Shown here one piece after another: positions 1,755 through 12,355 of a DNA stretch of 64,000 nucleotides. The notes under the pieces are model-generated. The model saw only the letters and a list, made by a program, of their open reading frames with translations. It ran no database searches and was not told the origin of the DNA. Where the stretch lies: the IMG/VR virus record IMGVR_UViG_3300043464_001630, positions 1 to 64,000 of that record; one strand, written 5' to 3'. The position numbers were made by a program, and so were the translations under genes. Numbering within the stretch: position 1 is the stretch's first letter; each line of letters starts with the position of its first letter.

Positions 1755-2053
1755 GGGAGAGAAGCTTAAGCAGGTTATAAGCGTCGGACTTCAGCCCACG
1801 TAAGTGGAACAGGGTCGGCTATTTAGAAATGAATAGTTAGTAAGGTGTATATCGGTGAACGGTTTAAAATCCCAACGCCGAGAGAAACCTCAGTAATGAG
1901 GGACTCGTAGAGACTACCATCACCTACCTAAAGTAGAAATACCAAGGTAAAGGCATAGTCCAGAGCACAAATTTACATAACTTATGTAAAGTGATGAAAA
2001 TCATAGTGTTAGGCATAATCCGAAGACAGTGGATTCGAATTCCACCTCTCCTA
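1755..2053 (+). tRNA. tRNA with CAU anticodon (Met or Ile2) split by a group I intron; exons 1755-1790 and 2014-2053
   Basis: Joined exons give acceptor GGGAGAG/CTCTCCT, D arm GCTT/AAGC, anticodon arm TCGGA-CT^CATAA-TCCGA, T arm GTGGA-TTCGAAT-TCCAC; no encoded CCA. Confidence 0.9.
1791..2013 (+). ncRNA. Group I self-splicing intron (223 nt) after U33
   Basis: P1 GACU/GGUC with U.G at 5' splice site; ATCGGTGAAC, GTAGAGACTA (R), GGCATAGTCC (S); terminal G. Confidence 0.9.
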
Positions 2054-2061
2054 CCTATGTT

Positions 2062-2124: not shown

Positions 2125-2901
2125 ATGGAAACAAACCATGTAAGACCGACTAAATTGTGTACTAAATGTAATTGTAAAATTTCAGATAATAATATAAAAA
2201 AACATTTTGAAAAATGTAATGGAAAACCATCTTATGCTGTACGTAAATCCAACAGAATTCCTATAAATTCAAATTATAATAATGATTTATATAAGTCTAA
2301 ATTAGAAAATTTAAATTGGGAGGAAATACAAGCATTTTATGATGATAATCATTCATTTAGAGATGTACAAAAAAAGTACAATTTGCCAAATAATAGATTA
2401 ACTAAATATATTAAAGAAGGGTTTTTAAAAACTAGATCTTCTCACGAAACGATGAAGCTACGCGGGACTCGCCAAGTTCCGACAATGACTTCAGAAATGA
2501 GAGAAAAAATTAGTAAAGGAATGCGTAAAGCAGTATTAGAAGGCAGACAGAAAACACCAAGACCTTACGGTACATACGGAACTACAATTCATCATACTTC
2601 TTGGTTAGGTAATGACGAAGTATTACACGGTGGATGGGAACTTAAAGTAGCAAAATATATGGATGAGCATAAAATCTATTGGTGTAAATCAAAAGAACAT
2701 TTCACTTATATATTTGAAGAACGCGAACATGAATATTTTCCAGACTTCTATCTAAAAGATTATGACTTATTCATAGAAGTAAAAGGACAAGTAATGCCTA
2801 AAGATCTAGAAAAATGGAAACAATTTCCTCGAAAGCTTTTAATCATTGATCAAAAGACTATTAAACGATTGGACGAGTTTTTCTCTGATATCCAACACTA
2901 A
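2125..2901 (+). CDS. Free-standing putative homing endonuclease (Zn finger, NUMOD3-like, PD-(D/E)XK TnsA-like)
   Basis: CxxC..H..C, SEMREKISKGM, WELKVAKYMD...YFPDFYL...FIEVKG. Confidence 0.75.
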   Translation: METNHVRPTKLCTKCNCKISDNNIKKHFEKCNGKPSYAVRKSNRIPINSNYNNDLYKSKLENLNWEEIQAFYDDNHSFRDVQKKYNLPNNRLTKYIKEGFLKTRSSHETMKLRGTRQVPTMTSEMREKISKGMRKAVLEGRQKTPRPYGTYGTTIHHTSWLGNDEVLHGGWELKVAKYMDEHKIYWCKSKEHFTYIFEEREHEYFPDFYLKDYDLFIEVKGQVMPKDLEKWKQFPRKLLIIDQKTIKRLDEFFSDIQH

Positions 2902-5054: not shown

Positions 5055-5314
5055 AAATTATAAATAAATAATCGTATGAAGCAAGAATGGCTCGAATTTT
5101 TAAAAGAACAAGATCCCGAATTATATCTACAAGCAAAGAGTTATATCGAAAAACTAGAATCCGAATTAGAAGAAAAGAAGATTATAGTTGAAAGATACCA
5201 AAATCTCATAGCATGTAACGGATTTTTTGATGAGAAATAGTTGACAAATTAGGGATATGTGGTAAATTAGTTGTGTAAGTGAAAGCTTACTTGTTCTTTG
5301 AATAGATAAAAAAA

Positions 5315-5577
5315 TCTCCTTTAGCATAGCTGGAAATGCGCCGTCCTGTTTTTTTTTATAAATGGCAGCTTATAGAAGTAATTCTATTTGAAAAATTCCG
5401 CTAAGTCGGTGAACGCTGAAACGCCAACGCCGAGCTAGCAGATCGCAAGATCGGGCAAGTGTAGAGACTTTACACGGAACATCCTTATGGGATGAAGACA
5501 AAGTCCATTCCACAGGAAATAAAACTTGTGGCTTTAAAGTAAGACGAAAAAGCAAGGTTCAAATCCTTGAGGGAGAG
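5315..5577 (+). tRNA. tRNA-Asn(GUU) split by a group I intron between positions 35 and 36; exons 5315-5349 and 5540-5577
   Basis: Acceptor TCTCCTT/AGGGAGA, discriminator G, D arm GCAT/ATGC, anticodon arm CGTC-CTGT^TAA-GACG, T arm CAAGG-TTCAAAT-CCTTG. Confidence 0.88.
5350..5539 (+). ncRNA. Group I self-splicing intron (190 nt)
   Basis: P1 CUGU/GCAG with U.G; GTCGGTGAAC...GCCGAG, GTAGAGACTT (R), GACAAAGTCC (S); terminal G at 5539. Confidence 0.88.
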
Positions 5578-5595
5578 CTTCTATTTGATTATCAA

Positions 5596-6555
5596 CTACT
5601 TACATAAATTTCTTTCTTTTAGTATTTTCTTATAAATTAATTTTAGATCCGGTACGGTATCAAAATCTATCCATAAGCATTTGTAATTATTTTTATTACA
5701 ATATTCTTCTAATGCTTTCTTTTTATGTGGTATGTGTAAATTGTATTTATGATTAGACTTTGATGTCCATTTTTGTTTAATCTCTACTATATGTGTTTGG
5801 TTATTAATATAACATATAAAATCTGGGTTGTATGTTTTATTTTTAATTCCGTCATTGTAAATTAATATATTTTTAAATCTTTCTATTGATACTGCATTTA
5901 GTTTGTCTATTAAATAGATTAATCCTGCTTTCTCTAAATTAGAATCTACTTCTATTGAAGTATTTTTATATGTAAAATGTTCTCTAGGTGTGGAGAAATT
6001 TCCATTCTTTTCTAAATATTTTTGTCTTTGTATGGAAATACTTAAAAATTTACAAGCTTCGCTACAAGTTTTTCGCTTTTTTTCTTTTGTACTATAAAAT
6101 TGTTTAGAACATACGGAACATACGTATTCTTGATTTGTATATTTTGAATATGTTTTACCTATATTGTTTATCCTTAGATGCTTAGTTGATTCGTATTTCT
6201 TTAATAAAGATTCCGAAGTTTTCTTTTTTGTTTCTTCTGTTATTATTCTGTTGGAATTATTAAATTTAGCTGAACAAGAACTAGAACAAAAGTAATTGTA
6301 AGTTTTTCCTTCTTTTAATTTCATTCTTTTATCTGCTGACTTTTCCAAAAACTTATCATATCCGATAACAATATTACATTGTTTACAGTGTTCTGGAGAT
6401 TCTAGATATTTTAATGTATTCTCTTCCTTTTGTTTTTTCCCGCGTTCTTTTATAAGAATAATATCCAAACCACTTCTTTTTACATGATGTGCTTTGTGTC
6501 CCTGTAAAGCCATTTTTTTATCAAACTCTTTATTACATATTTCGCATTTATACAT
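5596..6555 (-). CDS. Free-standing putative homing endonuclease (C2H2/Zn ribbons, NUMOD3-like, TnsA-like PD-(D/E)XK)
   Basis: YKCEIC...H...H, several CxxC, TEETKKKTSESL, DSNLE...YNPDF...IVEIKQ. Confidence 0.75.
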   Translation of the reverse strand: MYKCEICNKEFDKKMALQGHKAHHVKRSGLDIILIKERGKKQKEENTLKYLESPEHCKQCNIVIGYDKFLEKSADKRMKLKEGKTYNYFCSSSCSAKFNNSNRIITEETKKKTSESLLKKYESTKHLRINNIGKTYSKYTNQEYVCSVCSKQFYSTKEKKRKTCSEACKFLSISIQRQKYLEKNGNFSTPREHFTYKNTSIEVDSNLEKAGLIYLIDKLNAVSIERFKNILIYNDGIKNKTYNPDFICYINNQTHIVEIKQKWTSKSNHKYNLHIPHKKKALEEYCNKNNYKCLWIDFDTVPDLKLIYKKILKERNLCK

Positions 6556-6994: not shown

Positions 6995-7123
6995 AAACTT
7001 TCAGTAACCACAACCCCACTGGTATATAGGTCTTGTTATGATTGGAATGTAATAACATAGAAATCCTGCTGAAAACTAGCCACACATATTAATTTATGTG
7101 TGGCTTTTCTGTTAAATAATAAC

Positions 7124-8395
7124 ATGAATCGTAGAGATTTCATTTACACTGGGCTTGTAGGTGGATTAGGATTATCAATGGGTGACATCCTAAAATTACA
7201 AGCAGAATCCTCCTTGACTCCTAAAGCTCAGTCTGTTATTCATATCTTTTTACCGGGGGGTGCGGCATCACATGAAACGTTTGATCCACATCCACTTGCT
7301 CCTTCTGAGTATAGAGGCCCATTAAAAGCTATTCCTACTTCAGTAGTAGGACTACAATTCTCTGAATACTTACAGAAAACGGCAAAAATTGCAGATAAGC
7401 TCACAGTAGTACATTCCATGACACACGGAGAAGCCGCACACGAACGTGGGGTTACTTCTATGTTCACTGGCTATCGTCCATCTCCAGCATTAGAATATCC
7501 ATCATTTGGTTCTGTAATATCTAATCAATTAGGAGATAGAAATAATCTACCAGCATATGTTTGTATTCCACAGAAGATTGGTAACAATGGTAACGATCCA
7601 GCAGATAGTGGGTACTTATCGAAAGCATACGGCCCTTTTAGTTTAGGTTCTGATCCCGCCAACCTTGGATTTAAGGTTCGTGATTTAAATGTAGAAGTAG
7701 GATCAGAACGATTCGAAAGACGTAAATCTATTTTAGACACAGTAGATAGTCATTTTCGTTATTTAGAATCTAGTGATAACTTAGCAGCAATGGATACTTT
7801 CTATCAAAAGGCATTTGATTTAATATCTTCGCCAAAAGCTAAAGAAGCGTTTGCCTTGGATAAAGAACCCCAAGTGATGCGTGAAGCATACGGAATGAAC
7901 CAAGCAGGTCAGAGATTGTTAATGGCTCGTAGATTAGTAGAAGCAGGTGTAAGATTTGTTTCCGTAACTTATGGTGGATGGGATATGCATTCGGGGATTG
8001 CCAACGGAATAGGTAAACAACTACCCTCATTTGATCAGGCTTATGCAACACTCATTAATGATTTAGATCAGAGAGGAATGTTAGATTCAACACTAGTTAT
8101 GATCTCTTCTGAATTTGGTAGAACTCCGAAGATTAACAAAGATGCAGGGCGTGATCATTGGCCTAGAGTATTCTCTGTAGTGTTTGCTGGTGGTGGTTTT
8201 AAACGTGGTTATGTTTACGGTTCTTCTGATGCCACAGGAAGTGATGTAGAAAGTAATCCATTAACAGTAGAAAACCTAGCGGCTACAATGTATAATCAAT
8301 TAGGTATTGATCCAGAAACAAAACTCATGGCGGCAGGTGGAAGACCATCAGCTATTGTAAAAGATGGTACTGTAGTTAAAGATTTGTTAGTATAA
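7124..8395 (+). CDS. DUF1501 family protein (Tat-exported, alkaline phosphatase/sulfatase-like)
   Basis: MNRRDFI Tat motif; IFLPGGAASHETFDP, ARRLVEAGVRFV, GWDMH, SEFGRTP, GRDHWP; likely start ATG 7124 after TAAATA. Confidence 0.9.
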   Translation: MNRRDFIYTGLVGGLGLSMGDILKLQAESSLTPKAQSVIHIFLPGGAASHETFDPHPLAPSEYRGPLKAIPTSVVGLQFSEYLQKTAKIADKLTVVHSMTHGEAAHERGVTSMFTGYRPSPALEYPSFGSVISNQLGDRNNLPAYVCIPQKIGNNGNDPADSGYLSKAYGPFSLGSDPANLGFKVRDLNVEVGSERFERRKSILDTVDSHFRYLESSDNLAAMDTFYQKAFDLISSPKAKEAFALDKEPQVMREAYGMNQAGQRLLMARRLVEAGVRFVSVTYGGWDMHSGIANGIGKQLPSFDQAYATLINDLDQRGMLDSTLVMISSEFGRTPKINKDAGRDHWPRVFSVVFAGGGFKRGYVYGSSDATGSDVESNPLTVENLAATMYNQLGIDPETKLMAAGGRPSAIVKDGTVVKDLLV

Positions 8396-8403
8396 ATATT
8401 CTA

Positions 8404-9162
8404 ATGAATGATGATGATTTAATATTTGAAGCTTATCAAAATATATACGAAAGTGTAACTTTCAGTGTAGATGGGGGTAATCTATTTAATGTCGATAACA
8501 TTAATAATATCAATGATCTTGGTACTGCATTGCTTTATGGAGACAGAGATATAAAGGGAAGTTCTATTACTGAATTTATTAAATCCAATTTATCCGAACA
8601 AGAGTTTGAAGAATGGAAAAATAATAAAATATATGAATTTATAACAATGGATGGTTCAGAATTTGAAGCAGCAGAAGGAAATATAAATTTTTATACAGTT
8701 GGATTTCCGGAAAAAATAATACCTAAAGTTATATCTTTTATTAAGTATTTTATAGGTGAATACAACTTCAAGCTAACTTCAGAACCATATAAGGAGAGAT
8801 CAAATTTACATGAATCTGATGTTATTAGATTCCCAGTTCAAATAGTAACAAACAAGGAATCCGAAAATATACCAGAAGTAAATTTATCTAATAGAAACGC
8901 ATCTATTATTTTAATTAATATATTAAAATATCCCGAATCTGTTTTAGAAGATCATCAAATAAATTCAAGAGAATTATTAATGAAAATAGAAAACATAGAA
9001 GACAACGAAAAAAAGTTAAAATCTTATGTAGTAAAAAACGTAAATGACCGATTTACGGTTCTTGGATTAAGTGAAGAAAGAATTAAACGAATTTTATTTG
9101 ATTTAAAAAAATTAGCTCAATACGCGGTTGATAATCATTTCACTTATATAAAATTCGGTTAA
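8404..9162 (+). CDS. MND-leader hypothetical protein
   Basis: MNDDDLIFEAYQNIYE; TAAATA upstream. Confidence 0.55.
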   Translation: MNDDDLIFEAYQNIYESVTFSVDGGNLFNVDNINNINDLGTALLYGDRDIKGSSITEFIKSNLSEQEFEEWKNNKIYEFITMDGSEFEAAEGNINFYTVGFPEKIIPKVISFIKYFIGEYNFKLTSEPYKERSNLHESDVIRFPVQIVTNKESENIPEVNLSNRNASIILINILKYPESVLEDHQINSRELLMKIENIEDNEKKLKSYVVKNVNDRFTVLGLSEERIKRILFDLKKLAQYAVDNHFTYIKFG

Positions 9163-9170
9163 ATAAAATA

Positions 9171-9695
9171 ATGCTCATCGAACCAACAGAAATTCCAGAT
9201 GTTCTTCTCGTTACTCCTAAGGTCTTTAAAGACTCTCGTGGATATTTTCTAGAATCCTTTAATAATAAGCATTTACCATTTAATTTCGTACAAGATAATC
9301 AATCTTTTTCTTTAAAGAATACTATTAGAGGATTACATTATCAAGTAGTAAAACCACAAGGAAAACTAGTAAGAGTAGTTAAAGGTACTATTTTAGATGT
9401 AGCAGTAGACATTCGTAAAGATTCTCCTACATTCGGAGAATACGTAGCAGTAGAACTGTCTAGTGATAATTTTAAACAATTGTACGTTCCTGAAGGTTTT
9501 GCACACGGATTTTCTGTCTTATCAGAAGAAGCAGAAGTTCTTTACAAAACAACCGACTACTGGTACAAAGAATATGAACGTAGTATTAACTACAGTGATC
9601 CAGAATTAAACATAGATTGGAAAATTGAAGGTGTTCCTATGTTATCTGATAAAGATAGAGATGCAGTGTTATTAAAAGATGCTGAATATTTTTAA
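9171..9695 (+). CDS. rmlC: dTDP-4-dehydrorhamnose 3,5-epimerase
   Basis: DSRGYFLESF, QDNQSFS, RGLHYQ, QGKLVRV, PEGFAHGF. Confidence 0.95.
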   Translation: MLIEPTEIPDVLLVTPKVFKDSRGYFLESFNNKHLPFNFVQDNQSFSLKNTIRGLHYQVVKPQGKLVRVVKGTILDVAVDIRKDSPTFGEYVAVELSSDNFKQLYVPEGFAHGFSVLSEEAEVLYKTTDYWYKEYERSINYSDPELNIDWKIEGVPMLSDKDRDAVLLKDAEYF

Positions 9696-10173: not shown

Positions 10174-10776
10174 GTGAGACAAAATTATATTAAGATTTCT
10201 AAGCTAGCTAAAGATCTAGGAGTAACTAAACAAACTCTTTGGAACTGGAAATATGCTGGTGAAGTTGATTTTGTTAAAATAGGTGGGTTAAATTGTGTAA
10301 CTAAAGAAACATACAATAATCTATTAGGAATAGAAAACAAGAAAAAAGAATCTGTTGTGATTTATTGTAGGGTTTCTTCGACGGAAAATAAATCTAATAT
10401 AGAAACACAAAAACAAAGATTGTTAAATTATTGCAATGCAAAAGGTTACAAAGTATCTGATGTGATACAAGAGTTTGGTTCTGGTATCAACGATAAGAGA
10501 CCAAAACTCGAAAAATTATTAAAACAGCAAAATTTTACAAAACTAGTAGTAGAACATAAAGATCGTCTAACAAGAGTAGGATTTAATTATATCAATACAC
10601 TGCTAAACTTCAATCATATTGAGATTGAAGTAGTTAATTCTGTTGATGATGATAGAACTGATTTAATACAAGATTTCATATCAATTATTACATCTTATTG
10701 TGCTAGAATTTACGGCAACAGAAGATCAAAAAGAAAAACTGAACAATTAATAAAGGAGCTTGAATCCAATGAGTAG
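10174..10776 (+). CDS. tnpA: IS607 serine recombinase TnpA
   Basis: N-terminal HTH (LGVTKQTLWNW), IYCRVSS, GSGINDKR, VEHKDRLTR, DLIQDFISIITSYCARIYG. Confidence 0.93.
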   Translation: MRQNYIKISKLAKDLGVTKQTLWNWKYAGEVDFVKIGGLNCVTKETYNNLLGIENKKKESVVIYCRVSSTENKSNIETQKQRLLNYCNAKGYKVSDVIQEFGSGINDKRPKLEKLLKQQNFTKLVVEHKDRLTRVGFNYINTLLNFNHIEIEVVNSVDDDRTDLIQDFISIITSYCARIYGNRRSKRKTEQLIKELESNE

Positions 10777-12355
10777 ATGCACAAAGAGTTATTCTTTCTA
10801 CTCGAAAGATCTTAACATAGGCAAATTCAATCTCTTTTTGAAGAAAGCCGAAGCAGTCAGAGATTATAAGAATGCTTTATCTGTCGAAATTTCATCTAAT
10901 CTCTTGAAGTACACTGAAGTTTCTAAGTTTGATTTCCTTAAAATGTTTGGTACGAAAACTAATTATTTGAATCCTAGCTCATTAATGAGAGGAAACGAAA
11001 TACAAAAAGCTGTAGCGGATGTGTTTGAAGCTTATCAAAATAAAATAACACAAATTAAACAAAAAATGTCTTTCTTTGTTCAAAAAGGAAAAGAGGTAGA
11101 ATTTTACAAAAGAAACACAAAAAATAATAAAAAAGGTGATGTTAGAAGTTATGAAATAAAAACTAAAAATACTCCATTGACAAAAACAATCACATTTCTA
11201 TCTCGTTATGGTTCCGAAAACACACTAGATTATGTCAATAAAAGAGCGAATCAAAATGATGACAAACAAGATTTCTATAAGACACTAAAAATACATATTC
11301 AAAAGTTTGGCTTAGAAAGATTGTCGAAACTTGCTTACAGCAAAAGAACACAAGTTCTAAATAAGTATAATTATCCAATCACATTCACCTCTCTATCTTA
11401 TCGTTCTGCTCTTCAGACGAACGATCCTTTGATTCAAAATTCCAAGAACAAAACATTTTCAAATGGAACTATTTCAATACCAAGCTTTAATGGAAAACAT
11501 ATGTTTGTTCCGACTACATTCAATGTAAAACATCATGGTCATTTGAATCAATATAAATCAAAAGAGTATATAATTTGTATCGAACAAAAGCGAAAAAGAA
11601 TCAGACTGATTACTACAAAAGAAACAGAAGAAACTATTTCTCCAGAAGGAATAAATTATTTAGGTGTTGACACCAACGTCAAACATAATCTATTTGCTAC
11701 TTCAGATGGAATGAATATTGACATGGACAGAGATTTGTTTCATGGTTATATTGCTTTTCTAAAGAAATACCAAGACAAGAAAGAACATACTTCTGGAGAA
11801 GATCAACAATTTGAACTATGGCAAGAACGTGTTCAGTGTATGCTCAAAAAGAAAGCTAGAGAGTTAGTTGATGTGGCTATAGCTTCTGGTAAGAATCATA
11901 TCATCATGGAAGATCTTGGTAACTTTGGTAAATCTTACACTAAATCAGAAGAGTTCGAAGGATTCAAATATTCTAGATTAACACGATTACTCAATCTTTC
12001 TTCTCTAAACAAAATTGTTAAAGGCATTTGTAAGAAGCTTGGTGTTAGACTAACTCTCATTCCTTCTCATTATACATCTCAGTGGTGCTTTGACTGTGGA
12101 CACATAGACAAAGCTAACAGAACCACCCAAGAAATTTTCCAATGTGTTTGTTGCAATGTAACAGCAAATTCAGACTTTCATTCTTCACGAGCCATCCTTA
12201 GGATAGGTTCTTCAGACGTTCTGAAGAGCAATATGCTCGTGATGGATAAATCATTCGATTGGATTCCTAAGAAACTCTCAAAAGGTTTCATAAGAAAACA
12301 ATTGGAAGAAATAATTCCTAAAACAACTTTTCAGTTGAATTGTCAAACTTTATAG
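10760..12355 (+). CDS. tnpB: TnpB RNA-guided RuvC nuclease (long, 531 aa)
   Basis: LGVD (RuvC-I), IMEDL (RuvC-II), YTSQWCFDCGH...CVCC Zn ribbon, NSD (RuvC-III). Confidence 0.88.
   Translation: MNPMSRCTKSYSFYSKDLNIGKFNLFLKKAEAVRDYKNALSVEISSNLLKYTEVSKFDFLKMFGTKTNYLNPSSLMRGNEIQKAVADVFEAYQNKITQIKQKMSFFVQKGKEVEFYKRNTKNNKKGDVRSYEIKTKNTPLTKTITFLSRYGSENTLDYVNKRANQNDDKQDFYKTLKIHIQKFGLERLSKLAYSKRTQVLNKYNYPITFTSLSYRSALQTNDPLIQNSKNKTFSNGTISIPSFNGKHMFVPTTFNVKHHGHLNQYKSKEYIICIEQKRKRIRLITTKETEETISPEGINYLGVDTNVKHNLFATSDGMNIDMDRDLFHGYIAFLKKYQDKKEHTSGEDQQFELWQERVQCMLKKKARELVDVAIASGKNHIIMEDLGNFGKSYTKSEEFEGFKYSRLTRLLNLSSLNKIVKGICKKLGVRLTLIPSHYTSQWCFDCGHIDKANRTTQEIFQCVCCNVTANSDFHSSRAILRIGSSDVLKSNMLVMDKSFDWIPKKLSKGFIRKQLEEIIPKTTFQLNCQTL

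What the first reader, a model, noticed from the sequence alone, without database searches (positions are those of the whole stretch)
5315..5577. tRNA-Asn with a compact 190-nt group I intron inside the anticodon (35/36)
Seen: the splice sites fixed by the P1 U.G pair and terminal G place the intron between U35 and U36 of GUU. This differs from the classical cyanobacterial/proteobacterial positions. From memory, 35/36 introns were reported for Patescibacteria tRNA-Asn/Asp (unverified). The two introns in this window share P4 (TCGGTGAAC..CAACGCCGAG) and P7 motifs, suggesting one intron lineage colonising several phage tRNAs.
Basis: partly seen in the sequence, partly recalled or inferred. Interest (0 to 1): 0.65.

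Follow-up and report, generated by a model that had tools for sequence, protein, structure and literature searches.

The report
Self-splicing intron in phage tRNA-Asn
A 236-kb phage carries a tRNA-Asn gene split inside its anticodon by a small, well-conserved group I intron of a type already catalogued in bacteria, and comparison with other phages suggests that this intron jumps between phage tRNA-Asn genes.

Summary
Window 5315-5578 (+) is a tRNA-Asn(GUU) gene interrupted by a 190-nt ORF-less group I intron (5350-5539) between U35 and U36. ARAGORN in intron mode, the Rfam group I model (35.3 bits, below the family cut-off) and strong covariation across 14 homologous introns all agree. The window is the start of a 236-kb jumbo phage. 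I found only two tRNA genes in it, and both are intron-split.

The 35/36 site in tRNA-Asn is not new. A 2020 preprint catalogues "Asn.4Ug" introns in bacteria, and I found one in a Candidatus Gottesmanbacteria genome. The phage setting looks unreported: a 2014 review says all known phage introns lie in protein genes. Even so, at least 17 IMG/VR contigs carry the same kind of split tRNA-Asn.

The two introns are among the least alike in a set of 42, and the shared motifs are the general core of bacterial tRNA group I introns.

The near-identical intron sits in nine different tRNA-Asn exon backgrounds (introns about 87% identical, exons about 69%), which argues for lateral spread. A zinc-finger/PD-(D/E)xK nuclease gene repeatedly abuts the tRNA's 3' end, so collaborative homing is a testable idea. 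No RNA evidence was available.

The parts
5241..5268 (+). sigma-70-like promoter candidate (TTGACA, 16 nt, TAAATT, with TG before the -10 hexamer) 46 nt upstream of the tRNA
   Evidence: Consensus scan. The total count of such sites in the region is not above chance, so this part is inferred. A similar promoter and leader precede the second split tRNA at 1671-1699.
5315..5349 (+). tRNA-Asn 5' exon: acceptor 5' strand, D arm, anticodon stem 5' strand, C32 U33 G34 U35
   Evidence: ARAGORN -i. It is identical in the related phage G001.
5350..5539 (+). 190-nt ORF-less group I intron with the core shared by bacterial tRNA (IC3-class) introns
   Evidence: RF00028 at 35.3 bits; nhmmer with profiles of viral tRNA introns (the profiles include this sequence); covariation; 92.6% identical to the orthologue in G001, with compensatory changes in P6.
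5346..5368 (+). P1: exon C32-U35 plus intron nt 1 (5346-5350) paired with the internal guide GGCAG (5364-5368); U35(5349).G(5365) wobble at the 5' splice site
   Evidence: Read from the sequence and recovered by the MFE fold. CUGU/GCAG is invariant in 14 homologues, so it carries no covariation signal.
5372..5387 (+). P2 hairpin, 6 bp with a GUAA tetraloop
   Evidence: All 6 pairs show changes on both sides; 100% of cells paired.
5396..5400 (+). P3 5' strand (UUCCG), pairs with 5475-5479
   Evidence: All 5 pairs change on both sides; 100% of cells paired.
5406..5433 (+). P4 (5406-5411 with 5428-5433) enclosing a minimal P5 (5415-5416 with 5423-5424)
   Evidence: P5 pair G-C changes to A-U or U-A in three homologues.
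5441..5452 (+). P6a hairpin, 4 bp with a GCAA tetraloop
   Evidence: Two adjacent pairs are swapped G-C/A-U to A-U/G-C in G001 and L158, and the loop changes GCAA to GAAA.
5464..5469 (+). P7 5' strand (G, bulged A, GACU), pairs with 5502-5506; site of the guanosine-binding pocket by analogy with the Azoarcus intron
   Evidence: Invariant in all 14 homologues. It matches the P7 consensus of RF00028. The role in G binding is inferred.
5475..5479 (+). P3 3' strand (CGGAA); forms a pseudoknot with P7
5480..5494 (+). P8 hairpin, 5 bp
   Evidence: 4 of 5 pairs change on both sides.
5495..5506 (+). J8/7 (AAGACAA) and P7 3' strand (AGUCC)
5510..5531 (+). P9 hairpin, 7 bp
   Evidence: MFE fold. G.U changes to A-U in G001. 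Several compensatory changes appear in L172 and L179-L182.
5539..5539 (+). terminal (omega) G before the 3' splice site
   Evidence: The G|TAA junction is invariant in all homologues.
5540..5578 (+). tRNA-Asn 3' exon: U36 A37 A38, anticodon stem 3' strand, variable loop, T arm, acceptor 3' strand, discriminator G73; no encoded CCA
   Evidence: ARAGORN; sequence.
5596..6555 (-). 319-aa zinc-finger plus PD-(D/E)xK nuclease gene, convergent with the tRNA and 18 nt from its 3' end; candidate free-standing homing endonuclease
   Evidence: Invariant D245 and nearly invariant E258 and K260 in 28 homologues. AF2 model at pLDDT 85. Best structural match TnsA, Z 8.1, with all top matches of the PD-(D/E)xK superfamily. 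Homologues abut tRNA(GUU) genes in L171, L172 and L179, with a remnant in L177; the gene is absent at the orthologous site in G001.

Best explanation
Window 5315-5578 is a phage-encoded tRNA-Asn(GUU) gene whose anticodon is split between U35 and U36 by a 190-nt self-splicing group I intron. The intron has no reading frame and has the core typical of bacterial tRNA introns.

Proposed mechanism (inferred from established group I chemistry):
1. The precursor is transcribed, probably from the promoter-like site at 5241-5268.
2. The intron folds into P1 to P9. The internal guide GGCAG pairs with the exon end CUGU, which puts the U35.G wobble at the 5' splice site.
3. A free guanosine bound in P7 attacks that site.
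4. The terminal G (5539) replaces it, and the freed U35 3'-OH attacks the 3' splice site. This joins the exons into the loop CUGUUAA.
5. The anticodon stem holds the two exons together, because P10 is weak.
6. Host enzymes then trim the ends and add CCA.

The intron belongs to a lineage specific to the 35/36 site of tRNA-Asn. That lineage occurs in many large phages and in at least one CPR bacterium. It has moved laterally between unrelated tRNA-Asn genes.

Shown here: the gene and intron anatomy, conservation, covariation, and intron/exon discordance. Inferred: catalysis, expression, and the means of mobility.
For: - Detection: ARAGORN score 108.5 with 35/36 placement. RF00028 at 35.3 bits, E 5e-7.
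- Anatomy: full P1-P9, the U.G pair and the terminal G are readable from the sequence. MFE z -3.9.
- Covariation over 14 Asn introns: 98.5% of cells paired, 17 of 34 pairs changed on both sides, 0 of 500 shuffles as good, slid controls 26-43%.
- Orthologue in the related 243-kb phage G001 (about 80% nucleotide identity genome-wide): exons 73/74 identical, intron 92.6% identical, with compensatory swaps in P6 and a G.U to A-U change in P9.
- Phage setting: the locus lies in the middle of the G001 contig, and both records are CheckV-complete with a T4-like large terminase.
- Same splice junction CTGT|...G|TAA in at least 17 IMG/VR contigs and one Gottesmanbacteria genome.
- Lateral spread: introns sharing an exact 24-mer with this one lie in nine tRNA-Asn backgrounds. 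Mean intron identity is 86.6% against 68.6% for exons, and the intron is the more conserved in 34 of 36 pairs.
- In L158 the intron is the only strong nucleotide match to this genome: 93% over 173 nt.
Against:
- The Rfam score is below the family's gathering score (35.3 against 50).
- P1 and P7 never vary, so they carry no covariation signal.
- P10 is weak.
- The tRNA has a C27xA43 mismatch and no encoded CCA.
- The 24-mer selection enriches for similar introns, so the intron identities are biased upward, although the low exon identities are not.
- Host and habitat are unknown.
Confidence: 0.82

Rival explanations
1. Collaborative homing. The ORF-less intron spreads because the abutting free-standing zinc-finger/PD-(D/E)xK nuclease (5596-6555, minus strand) cuts intron-less tRNA-Asn genes at or near the anticodon region. 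Repair from the intron-bearing phage during co-infection then copies the intron, and sometimes the nuclease gene, into the recipient. This adds a mobility mechanism to the main explanation rather than replacing it.
For: - The nuclease fold and catalytic D...ExK are conserved.
- Homologues sit convergent and within 0-18 nt of the 3' end of tRNA(GUU) genes in G000, L172, L179 and L171. L177 keeps only a 62-aa remnant.
- Presence/absence polymorphism: G001, L158 and L182 have the intron but not the gene.
- Another family member lies in an unrelated context, in L173 and L174, as mobile genes do.
- Precedents are F-CphI with the psbA intron and mobE with I-TevIII (PMC6083498 and PMC2790892, listed). 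The tRNA-fMet intron endonuclease I-Ssp6803I is a PD-(D/E)xK enzyme (own knowledge).
Against: - No cleavage data exist.
- In L171 the homologue abuts an intron-less tRNA(GUU) with the same loop sequence, which a loop-specific enzyme should cut unless the stems matter.
- Foldseek E-values are all above 0.001, and Z of about 8 is borderline by the tool's own note.
- Most intron-bearing loci lack the gene.
- The adjacency could reflect some other tRNA-linked role.
Confidence: 0.35
2. The intron is a decayed, non-splicing insertion and the tRNA-Asn is a pseudogene.
For: - The Rfam score is below the gathering cut-off.
- P5 is minimal and P10 is weak.
- There is no expression evidence.
- Standard tRNA finders see no tRNA in this genome.
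Against: - Every core element is intact.
- Exons are 73/74 identical and the intron 92.6% identical between phages that are only about 80% identical overall, and substitutions in the helices are compensatory.
- The family covaries strongly.
- Short P5 and P6 also occur in the other compact tRNA introns in the Williams seed alignment.
Confidence: 0.07
3. The split tRNA is bacterial DNA, either a prophage flank or a mis-binned host fragment, and not a phage gene.
For: - The locus lies only 5.3 kb from the start of the contig.
- tRNA genes are common prophage attachment sites.
- The same intron type occurs in a CPR bacterium.
- IMG/VR classes the record's ends as linear.
Against: - In G001 the orthologous locus is at 134 kb of 242.6 kb, flanked by genes shared with G000.
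- Both records are CheckV 100% complete.
- Flanking genes have phage-family matches.
- The same kind of split tRNA-Asn sits inside tRNA clusters of many large viral contigs.
Confidence: 0.04
4. The two split tRNAs of this phage carry copies of one intron that spread within the genome.
For: Both introns share TCGGTGAAC...CAACGCCGAG and GTAGAGACT, both are ORF-less, and both lie within 4 kb of each other.
Against: - Core identity is 50.9%, the lowest or near-lowest of 41 comparisons for each intron.
- The shared strings occur in 104 viral stretches across Leu, Met, Lys, Thr, suppressor and other tRNAs, and in the published Azoarcus-type seed sequences.
- The nearest relatives of the CAU intron are Leu and CAU introns of other contigs. 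The nearest relatives of the Asn intron are Asn introns.
Confidence: 0.05

Closest known systems
Asn.4Ug class of bacterial tRNA group I introns (Williams 2020, bioRxiv 10.1101/2020.01.27.920355; seed Pam37.Asn.4Ug, with sister classes Asp.4Ug, Tyr.4Ug and Lys.4Ug)
   Same: Same tRNA isotype. Same insertion after the fourth anticodon-loop nucleotide (35/36). U at -1 and G at omega, with the same core motifs. A Gottesmanbacteria example found here shares the guide sequence, the GUAA-capped P2 and the P3-P4 region.
   Different: That catalogue covers bacterial (and nominally archaeal) genome assemblies only, whereas this intron is in a jumbo phage. The published seed intron is longer and has extra P2 and P7 insertions, judged by eye and not aligned with tools.
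Azoarcus tRNA-Ile(CAU) IC3 intron (205 nt)
   Same: Compact and ORF-less, in an anticodon loop. The P4 3' strand, J6/7-P7 (GUAGAGACU) and J8/7-P7' (A.AGUCC) strings are nearly identical. GNRA-capped peripheral hairpins.
   Different: Azoarcus is inserted at 36/37 after CAU, is bacterial, and has longer P5, P6a and P9. Self-splicing is demonstrated there and not here.
Cyanobacterial and plastid tRNA-Leu(UAA) intron, and the cyanobacterial tRNA-fMet intron with its endonuclease I-Ssp6803I
   Same: Group I introns in anticodon loops. The second intron of this window sits at the fMet-type 33/34 site. I-Ssp6803I is a PD-(D/E)xK homing endonuclease specific for a tRNA anticodon region (Bonocora and Shub 2001, cited; enzyme family from own knowledge).
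   Different: Different tRNAs and positions (34/35, 33/34). I-Ssp6803I is encoded inside its intron, whereas the candidate nuclease here is free-standing and outside the intron.
Collaborative (trans) homing in phages: F-CphI with the cyanophage psbA intron; T4 mobE with the I-TevIII intron; T4 SegB in the tRNA cluster
   Same: An ORF-less or defunct intron sits next to a free-standing nuclease gene, with presence/absence polymorphism of the nuclease gene among related phages (PMC6083498, PMC2790892, PMC13096335).
   Different: Those introns are in protein genes, and SegB acts without any intron. The nucleases there are of Endo VII, HNH or GIY-YIG type, not zinc-finger/PD-(D/E)xK. Cleavage is shown there and untested here.

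Membership tests
Group I intron (Rfam RF00028) | P1 helix with a U.G wobble pair at the 5' splice site | tested here: met
   U35(5349).G(5365) lies within CUGU+U paired to GGCAG. It is invariant in 14 homologues.
Group I intron (Rfam RF00028) | Terminal guanosine (omega G) immediately before the 3' splice site | tested here: met
   G5539. The G|UAA junction is present in every homologue.
Group I intron (Rfam RF00028) | Conserved core P3-P8 with the P3/P7 pseudoknot and the P4-P6 domain, supported by covariation | tested here: met
   P2, P3 and P8 covary fully. P4 and P5 covary partly. P7 is invariant.
Group I intron (Rfam RF00028) | Score at or above the family's gathering threshold | tested here: not met
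   35.3 bits against 50. The Rfam seed has no bacterial members, and Williams accepted hits of 18-20 bits or more when they lay inside split tRNAs. A relative in G002 scores 66 bits.
Group I intron (Rfam RF00028) | Guanosine-dependent self-splicing | not testable with these tools
   This needs an in-vitro splicing assay or RNA reads.
Bacterial tRNA group I introns, type Asn.4Ug (Williams 2020) | Lies in the anticodon loop of tRNA-Asn after the fourth loop nucleotide, with U at -1 and G at omega, and yields a 7-nt loop with GUU | tested here: met
   The only other U/G-compatible register (+4) destroys the anticodon stem.
Bacterial tRNA group I introns, type Asn.4Ug (Williams 2020) | Match to the gpI_bact_tRNA covariance model | not tested
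   The model is held only as supplementary text and could not be run. The nhmmer profiles I built from viral tRNA introns match at E 1.6e-18 (core profile) and 3e-40 (Asn profile), but both profiles include this sequence.
Subgroup IC3 | Subgroup-specific peripheral architecture and core sequence, as in the Azoarcus and Anabaena introns | tested here: inconclusive
   The core strings match the Azoarcus-type seed by eye, and the helices P2, P5, P6a, P8 and P9 are present. No subgroup-specific model was available.
tRNA-Asn | Cloverleaf, GUU anticodon, discriminator G73 | tested here: met
   ARAGORN cloverleaf and G73 at 5578. One C27xA43 mismatch is conserved in G001. That G73 is an Asn identity element is from own knowledge.
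PD-(D/E)xK homing endonuclease (for the flanking ORF 5596-6555) | Restriction-endonuclease-like fold with a conserved D...(D/E)xK | tested here: met
   D245 invariant, E258 and K260 nearly invariant. TnsA at Z 8.1, with all top matches from this superfamily. The Pfam hits are below threshold.
PD-(D/E)xK homing endonuclease (for the flanking ORF 5596-6555) | Site-specific cleavage of the intron-less or endonuclease-less allele, and biased inheritance | not testable with these tools
   Only the gene's recurrent position next to tRNA(GUU) genes and its patchy presence are shown.

The most novel reading that the evidence does not exclude
Group I introns in phage tRNA genes are a widespread but overlooked class of mobile element. 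This Asn 35/36 lineage spreads among jumbo-phage tRNA-Asn genes by collaborative homing with a new family of free-standing zinc-finger/PD-(D/E)xK endonucleases that park at the 3' end of the tRNA gene. If so, standard phage tRNA counts, made without intron-aware tools, are systematically too low. This 236-kb phage would be scored as having no tRNA at all.
Probability: 0.3. Interest if true: 0.7.

Novelty: new member of a known kind. Interest (0 to 1): 0.5.

Why it matters
- **Phage introns.** Phage group I introns have been described in protein genes. A 2014 review states that none was known in phage tRNA genes, and four full-text searches found no later report. This locus and at least 17 similar IMG/VR contigs, several of 170-420 kb, show that phage tRNA genes do carry them.
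- **Annotation.** Default tRNA finders report no tRNA for this phage although it has two. tRNA inventories of large phages, and codon-usage or anti-defence arguments built on them, may therefore miss genes.
- **Mobility.** Very similar introns in very different tRNA-Asn exons, together with a recurrently adjacent nuclease gene, offer a compact natural system for studying how ORF-less introns move.
- **Ribozyme work.** At 190 nt, with rich natural covariation, the intron is also a convenient small ribozyme candidate.

Tried and rejected
- **Default ARAGORN and Rfam at gathering thresholds:** nothing in the window. The split tRNA is seen only in intron mode.
- **The genome search with RF00005 and RF00028:** lossy. 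It missed two plain tRNAs and the Asn intron in G001 that ARAGORN finds (against 45, 51). I therefore do not rely for 'no other tRNA'; that rests on ARAGORN and nhmmer.
- **ARAGORN at lowered thresholds:** gives dozens of noise calls scoring 85-96. The CAU tRNA (89.1) is accepted only because an intron core lies exactly between its halves.
- **blastn of the locus against GenBank phages:** no match.
- **The look-up of sequencing runs:** I did not try to get the same information another way.
- **The downstream ORF against IMG/VR by peptide patterns:** no relatives.
- **Exon 1 searched on its own in IMG/VR and JGI metagenomes:** only G001. No intron-less allele of this particular tRNA-Asn was found.
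- Exons were concatenated only inside scripts for pairwise identities, and the in-silico splice is ARAGORN's own.
- **L064:** called Asn by ARAGORN but rejected. By the U/G rule and its A73 it is tRNA-Lys(UUU) split at 34/35.
- **G002 'Leu(CAG)' split call:** looks like a false join.
- **Foldseek of the nuclease model against PDB:** no hit at E 0.001 or better. The fold assignment rests on the consistency of the hits, the VIA Z-scores and the motif.
- **Host:** not determined. The terminase is under 37% identical to that of any isolate.

Full report
**What is there**

The window is the first 64 kb of a 236,391-bp IMG/VR virus record rated 100% complete by CheckV. It encodes a T4-type large terminase that is under 37% identical to that of any isolated phage.

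Default ARAGORN finds no tRNA in the window or in the whole genome, and Rfam at gathering thresholds finds nothing. With introns allowed, ARAGORN calls one gene: tRNA-Asn(GTT) at 5315-5578, score 108.5, with a 190-nt intron at 35/36.

The exact parts are:
- 5' exon 5315-5349
- intron 5350-5539
- 3' exon 5540-5578, ending in discriminator G73

No CCA is encoded.

**Is it a group I intron?**

The Rfam group I model matches 5346-5522 at 35.3 bits, with E 5e-7 in a 1.3-kb search and 2e-8 for the genome. This is below the family's gathering score of 50. The Rfam seed holds no bacterial introns, and the published tRNA-intron survey accepted hits from 18-20 bits when they lay inside a split tRNA.

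Every helix can be read from the sequence:

| Element | Window coordinates |
|---|---|
| P1 (CUGU+U with GGCAG; U35.G wobble) | 5346-5350 / 5364-5368 |
| P2 (GUAA loop) | 5372-5377 / 5382-5387 |
| P3 | 5396-5400 / 5475-5479 |
| P4 | 5406-5411 / 5428-5433 |
| P5 (two pairs) | 5415-5416 / 5423-5424 |
| P6a (GCAA loop) | 5441-5444 / 5449-5452 |
| P7 (bulged A at 5465) | 5464, 5466-5469 / 5502-5506 |
| P8 | 5480-5484 / 5490-5494 |
| P9 | 5510-5516 / 5525-5531 |
| terminal G | 5539 |

The minimum-energy fold recovers all the nested helices and the anticodon stem, with z -3.9. P3 and P7 cross each other, so that program cannot predict them together.

**Comparative support**

A related 242,607-bp phage, G001, is about 80% identical at the nucleotide level across the genome. 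It carries the orthologous gene in the middle of its contig. The exons are 73/74 identical and its 187-nt intron is 92.6% identical to this one. The few differences respect the structure:
- two adjacent P6a pairs are swapped, G-C/A-U to A-U/G-C;
- the P6a loop changes from GCAA to GAAA;
- a P9 G.U pair becomes A-U.

A scan of IMG/VR for the guide sequence plus P7 found 29 stretches. At least 17 of them are tRNA-Asn(GUU) genes split at exactly CTGT|...G|TAA. A scan of GTDB genomes found the same arrangement in a Candidatus Gottesmanbacteria genome.

On an alignment of 14 distinct Asn introns, my P1-P8 structure gave these results:
- 98.5% of cells paired, against 26-43% when the partners are slid;
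- 17 of 34 pairs changed on both sides;
- 0 of 500 shuffles reached any of the five measures;
- P2, P3 and P8 covary throughout, while P1 and P7 never vary and so say nothing either way.

In most relatives the intron does not start with U. The 35/36 register is therefore not an artefact of the U run in this copy.

**How new is the position?**

The classical bacterial sites are Leu 34/35, fMet 33/34, and Arg and Ile2 36/37. Williams (bioRxiv 2020) extended these to 21 types. The seed alignment of that preprint contains Asn.4Ug, Asp.4Ug, Tyr.4Ug and Lys.4Ug, all of which are 35/36.

The phage host appears not to be described:
- The 2014 review of bacterial group I introns says that all phage introns then known are in protein genes despite many phage tRNA genes.
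- Four full-text searches found no later report.
- The huge-phage survey does not mention introns at all.
- The jumbo gut-phage paper describes introns of about 206 nt in protein genes only.

A single narrow motif scan nevertheless put 48 IMG/VR stretches inside split tRNAs of many isotypes. Some of those short 'viral' contigs may be host flanks, so that count is an upper bound for true phage genes.

**The second intron and the 'one lineage' idea**

At 1755-2055 there is a second split tRNA. Its exons are 1755-1790 and 2014-2055, with a 223-nt intron at 1791-2013. ARAGORN sees it only at lowered thresholds and mis-places the junction. The U/G rule gives a CAU anticodon with the intron at the classical 33/34 site. 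A profile of viral tRNA-intron cores (the alignment includes this sequence) matches the interval at E 2e-17.

Motif and profile scans find no third intron of this type in the genome. Both tRNA genes found in this phage are therefore split.

The two introns are only 50.9% identical over the core. Each ranks last or third from last for the other among 41 comparisons. The shared P4 and P7 strings are the common core of bacterial tRNA introns.

**Evidence that the Asn intron moves**

Scans with an exact 24-mer from P7-P3'-P8 of this intron found it in nine different tRNA-Asn genes, always at 35/36.
- Pairwise intron identity averages 86.6% (minimum 80%).
- The exons average 68.6%.
- The intron is the better conserved in 34 of 36 pairs.
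- In L158, a contig related to this phage only at the protein level, the intron is the one strong nucleotide match: 93% over 173 nt.

Selecting by an intron word inflates the intron identities. It does not explain why slowly evolving tRNA exons should differ so much more than an intron. I read this as lateral transfer between tRNA-Asn genes.

**A candidate helper**

The intron has no reading frame. Eighteen bases beyond the tRNA, on the other strand, lies a 319-aa gene (5596-6555). It has a family of 46 uncharacterised relatives.
- The family keeps four cysteines and D245 invariant, and E258 and K260 nearly invariant.
- The model is confident, at pLDDT 85.
- The C-terminal 130 residues match PD-(D/E)xK nucleases only. 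TnsA is best at Z 8.1 with rmsd 3.8 A over 128 residues, followed by XisH, Hjc, FAN1 and the catalytic domain of a homing endonuclease.
- No Foldseek hit passes E 0.001, and the Pfam hits are below threshold.

Homologues occupy the same convergent position against the 3' end of a tRNA(GUU) gene in L172 and L179, both with the intron, and in L171, which has an intron-less long-arm tRNA. L177 keeps a 62-aa remnant. G001, L158 and L182 lack the gene, and another family member lies elsewhere, in L173 and L174.

This patchy, site-linked distribution is what free-standing homing endonucleases show. It recalls collaborative homing (PMC6083498, PMC2790892). I give it a probability of about one in three. 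The L171 case argues against a simple loop-specific enzyme.

A different nuclease (2125-2901; PHROG 'endonuclease', E 4e-12) follows the CAU tRNA. Its homologues sit beside split tRNAs in four other contigs, and beside the uninterrupted tRNA-Met at the syntenic G001 locus.

**Limits**

- No RNA data could be obtained, so splicing is inferred from intact anatomy, conservation and covariation.
- The host is unknown.
- No database search was run with a joined exon sequence. Exon 1 was searched alone, and concatenated exons were used only inside scripts for identities.

**Verdict**

This is a real group I intron and very probably functional. It sits in a phage tRNA-Asn, at a site already known from bacteria. 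It is a new member of a known kind, made more interesting by its phage setting, its apparent mobility and its recurrent nuclease neighbour.

Noticed in passing
window 1755-2055 (+): Second split tRNA with anticodon CAU. A 223-nt group I intron (1791-2013) sits at the classical 33/34 site, and position 8 is an unusual A. A promoter-like site lies at 1671-1699 and a terminator at 2062-2094. The syntenic locus in G001 has the same leader but a different, uninterrupted tRNA-Met (exons 70.5% identical).
   Followed up: partly
window 2125-2901 (+): 258-aa zinc-ribbon plus endonuclease I-like nuclease directly after the CAU tRNA. Homologues lie within about 0.6 kb of split tRNA genes in L049, G002, L153 and L163.
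   Followed up: partly
window 6997-7108 (+): Conserved structured element of about 90 nt (fold z -3.3) followed by an intrinsic terminator at 7079-7108. It is 80% identical to a segment next to tRNA-Met in L158, with compensatory changes in its hairpin. It is possibly an unknown small RNA of phage tRNA clusters.
   Followed up: partly
window 5241-5314 and 1671-1754: Both split tRNAs are preceded by a similar promoter and leader: TGTGGTAnAnT, then a hairpin, then GTTCTTT(A/G)A. The leader is conserved in G001.
   Followed up: no
L164:7423-7700, L168, L171:3962-4051: tRNAs with a GUU (Asn) anticodon on a long-variable-arm (type II-like) body, in large viral contigs. Two carry the 35/36 intron and one is uninterrupted.
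   Followed up: no
G002 (IMGVR_UViG_3300011115_000967) 24.1-29.6 kb: tRNA cluster in which at least two genes are split by group I introns: Asn at 35/36 and a likely Ile(UAU) at 34/35. The latter intron scores 66 bits on RF00028.
   Followed up: partly
window 10760-12355 (+): 531-aa ORF with a Cas12f1/TnpB-like TNB domain (Pfam E 3e-9), pointing to a transposon-associated RNA-guided nuclease in the phage.
   Followed up: no
window 7100-9695 (+): Host-like genes in the phage: DUF1501 (383 bits) and dTDP-4-dehydrorhamnose 3,5-epimerase. They are conserved in relatives L171 and L172.
   Followed up: no
tool behaviour, G001: the genome search with RF00005 and RF00028 returned no match in G001, although ARAGORN finds two plain tRNAs and the split tRNA-Asn there. 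Negative results from that route are unreliable for short RNAs.
   Followed up: yes
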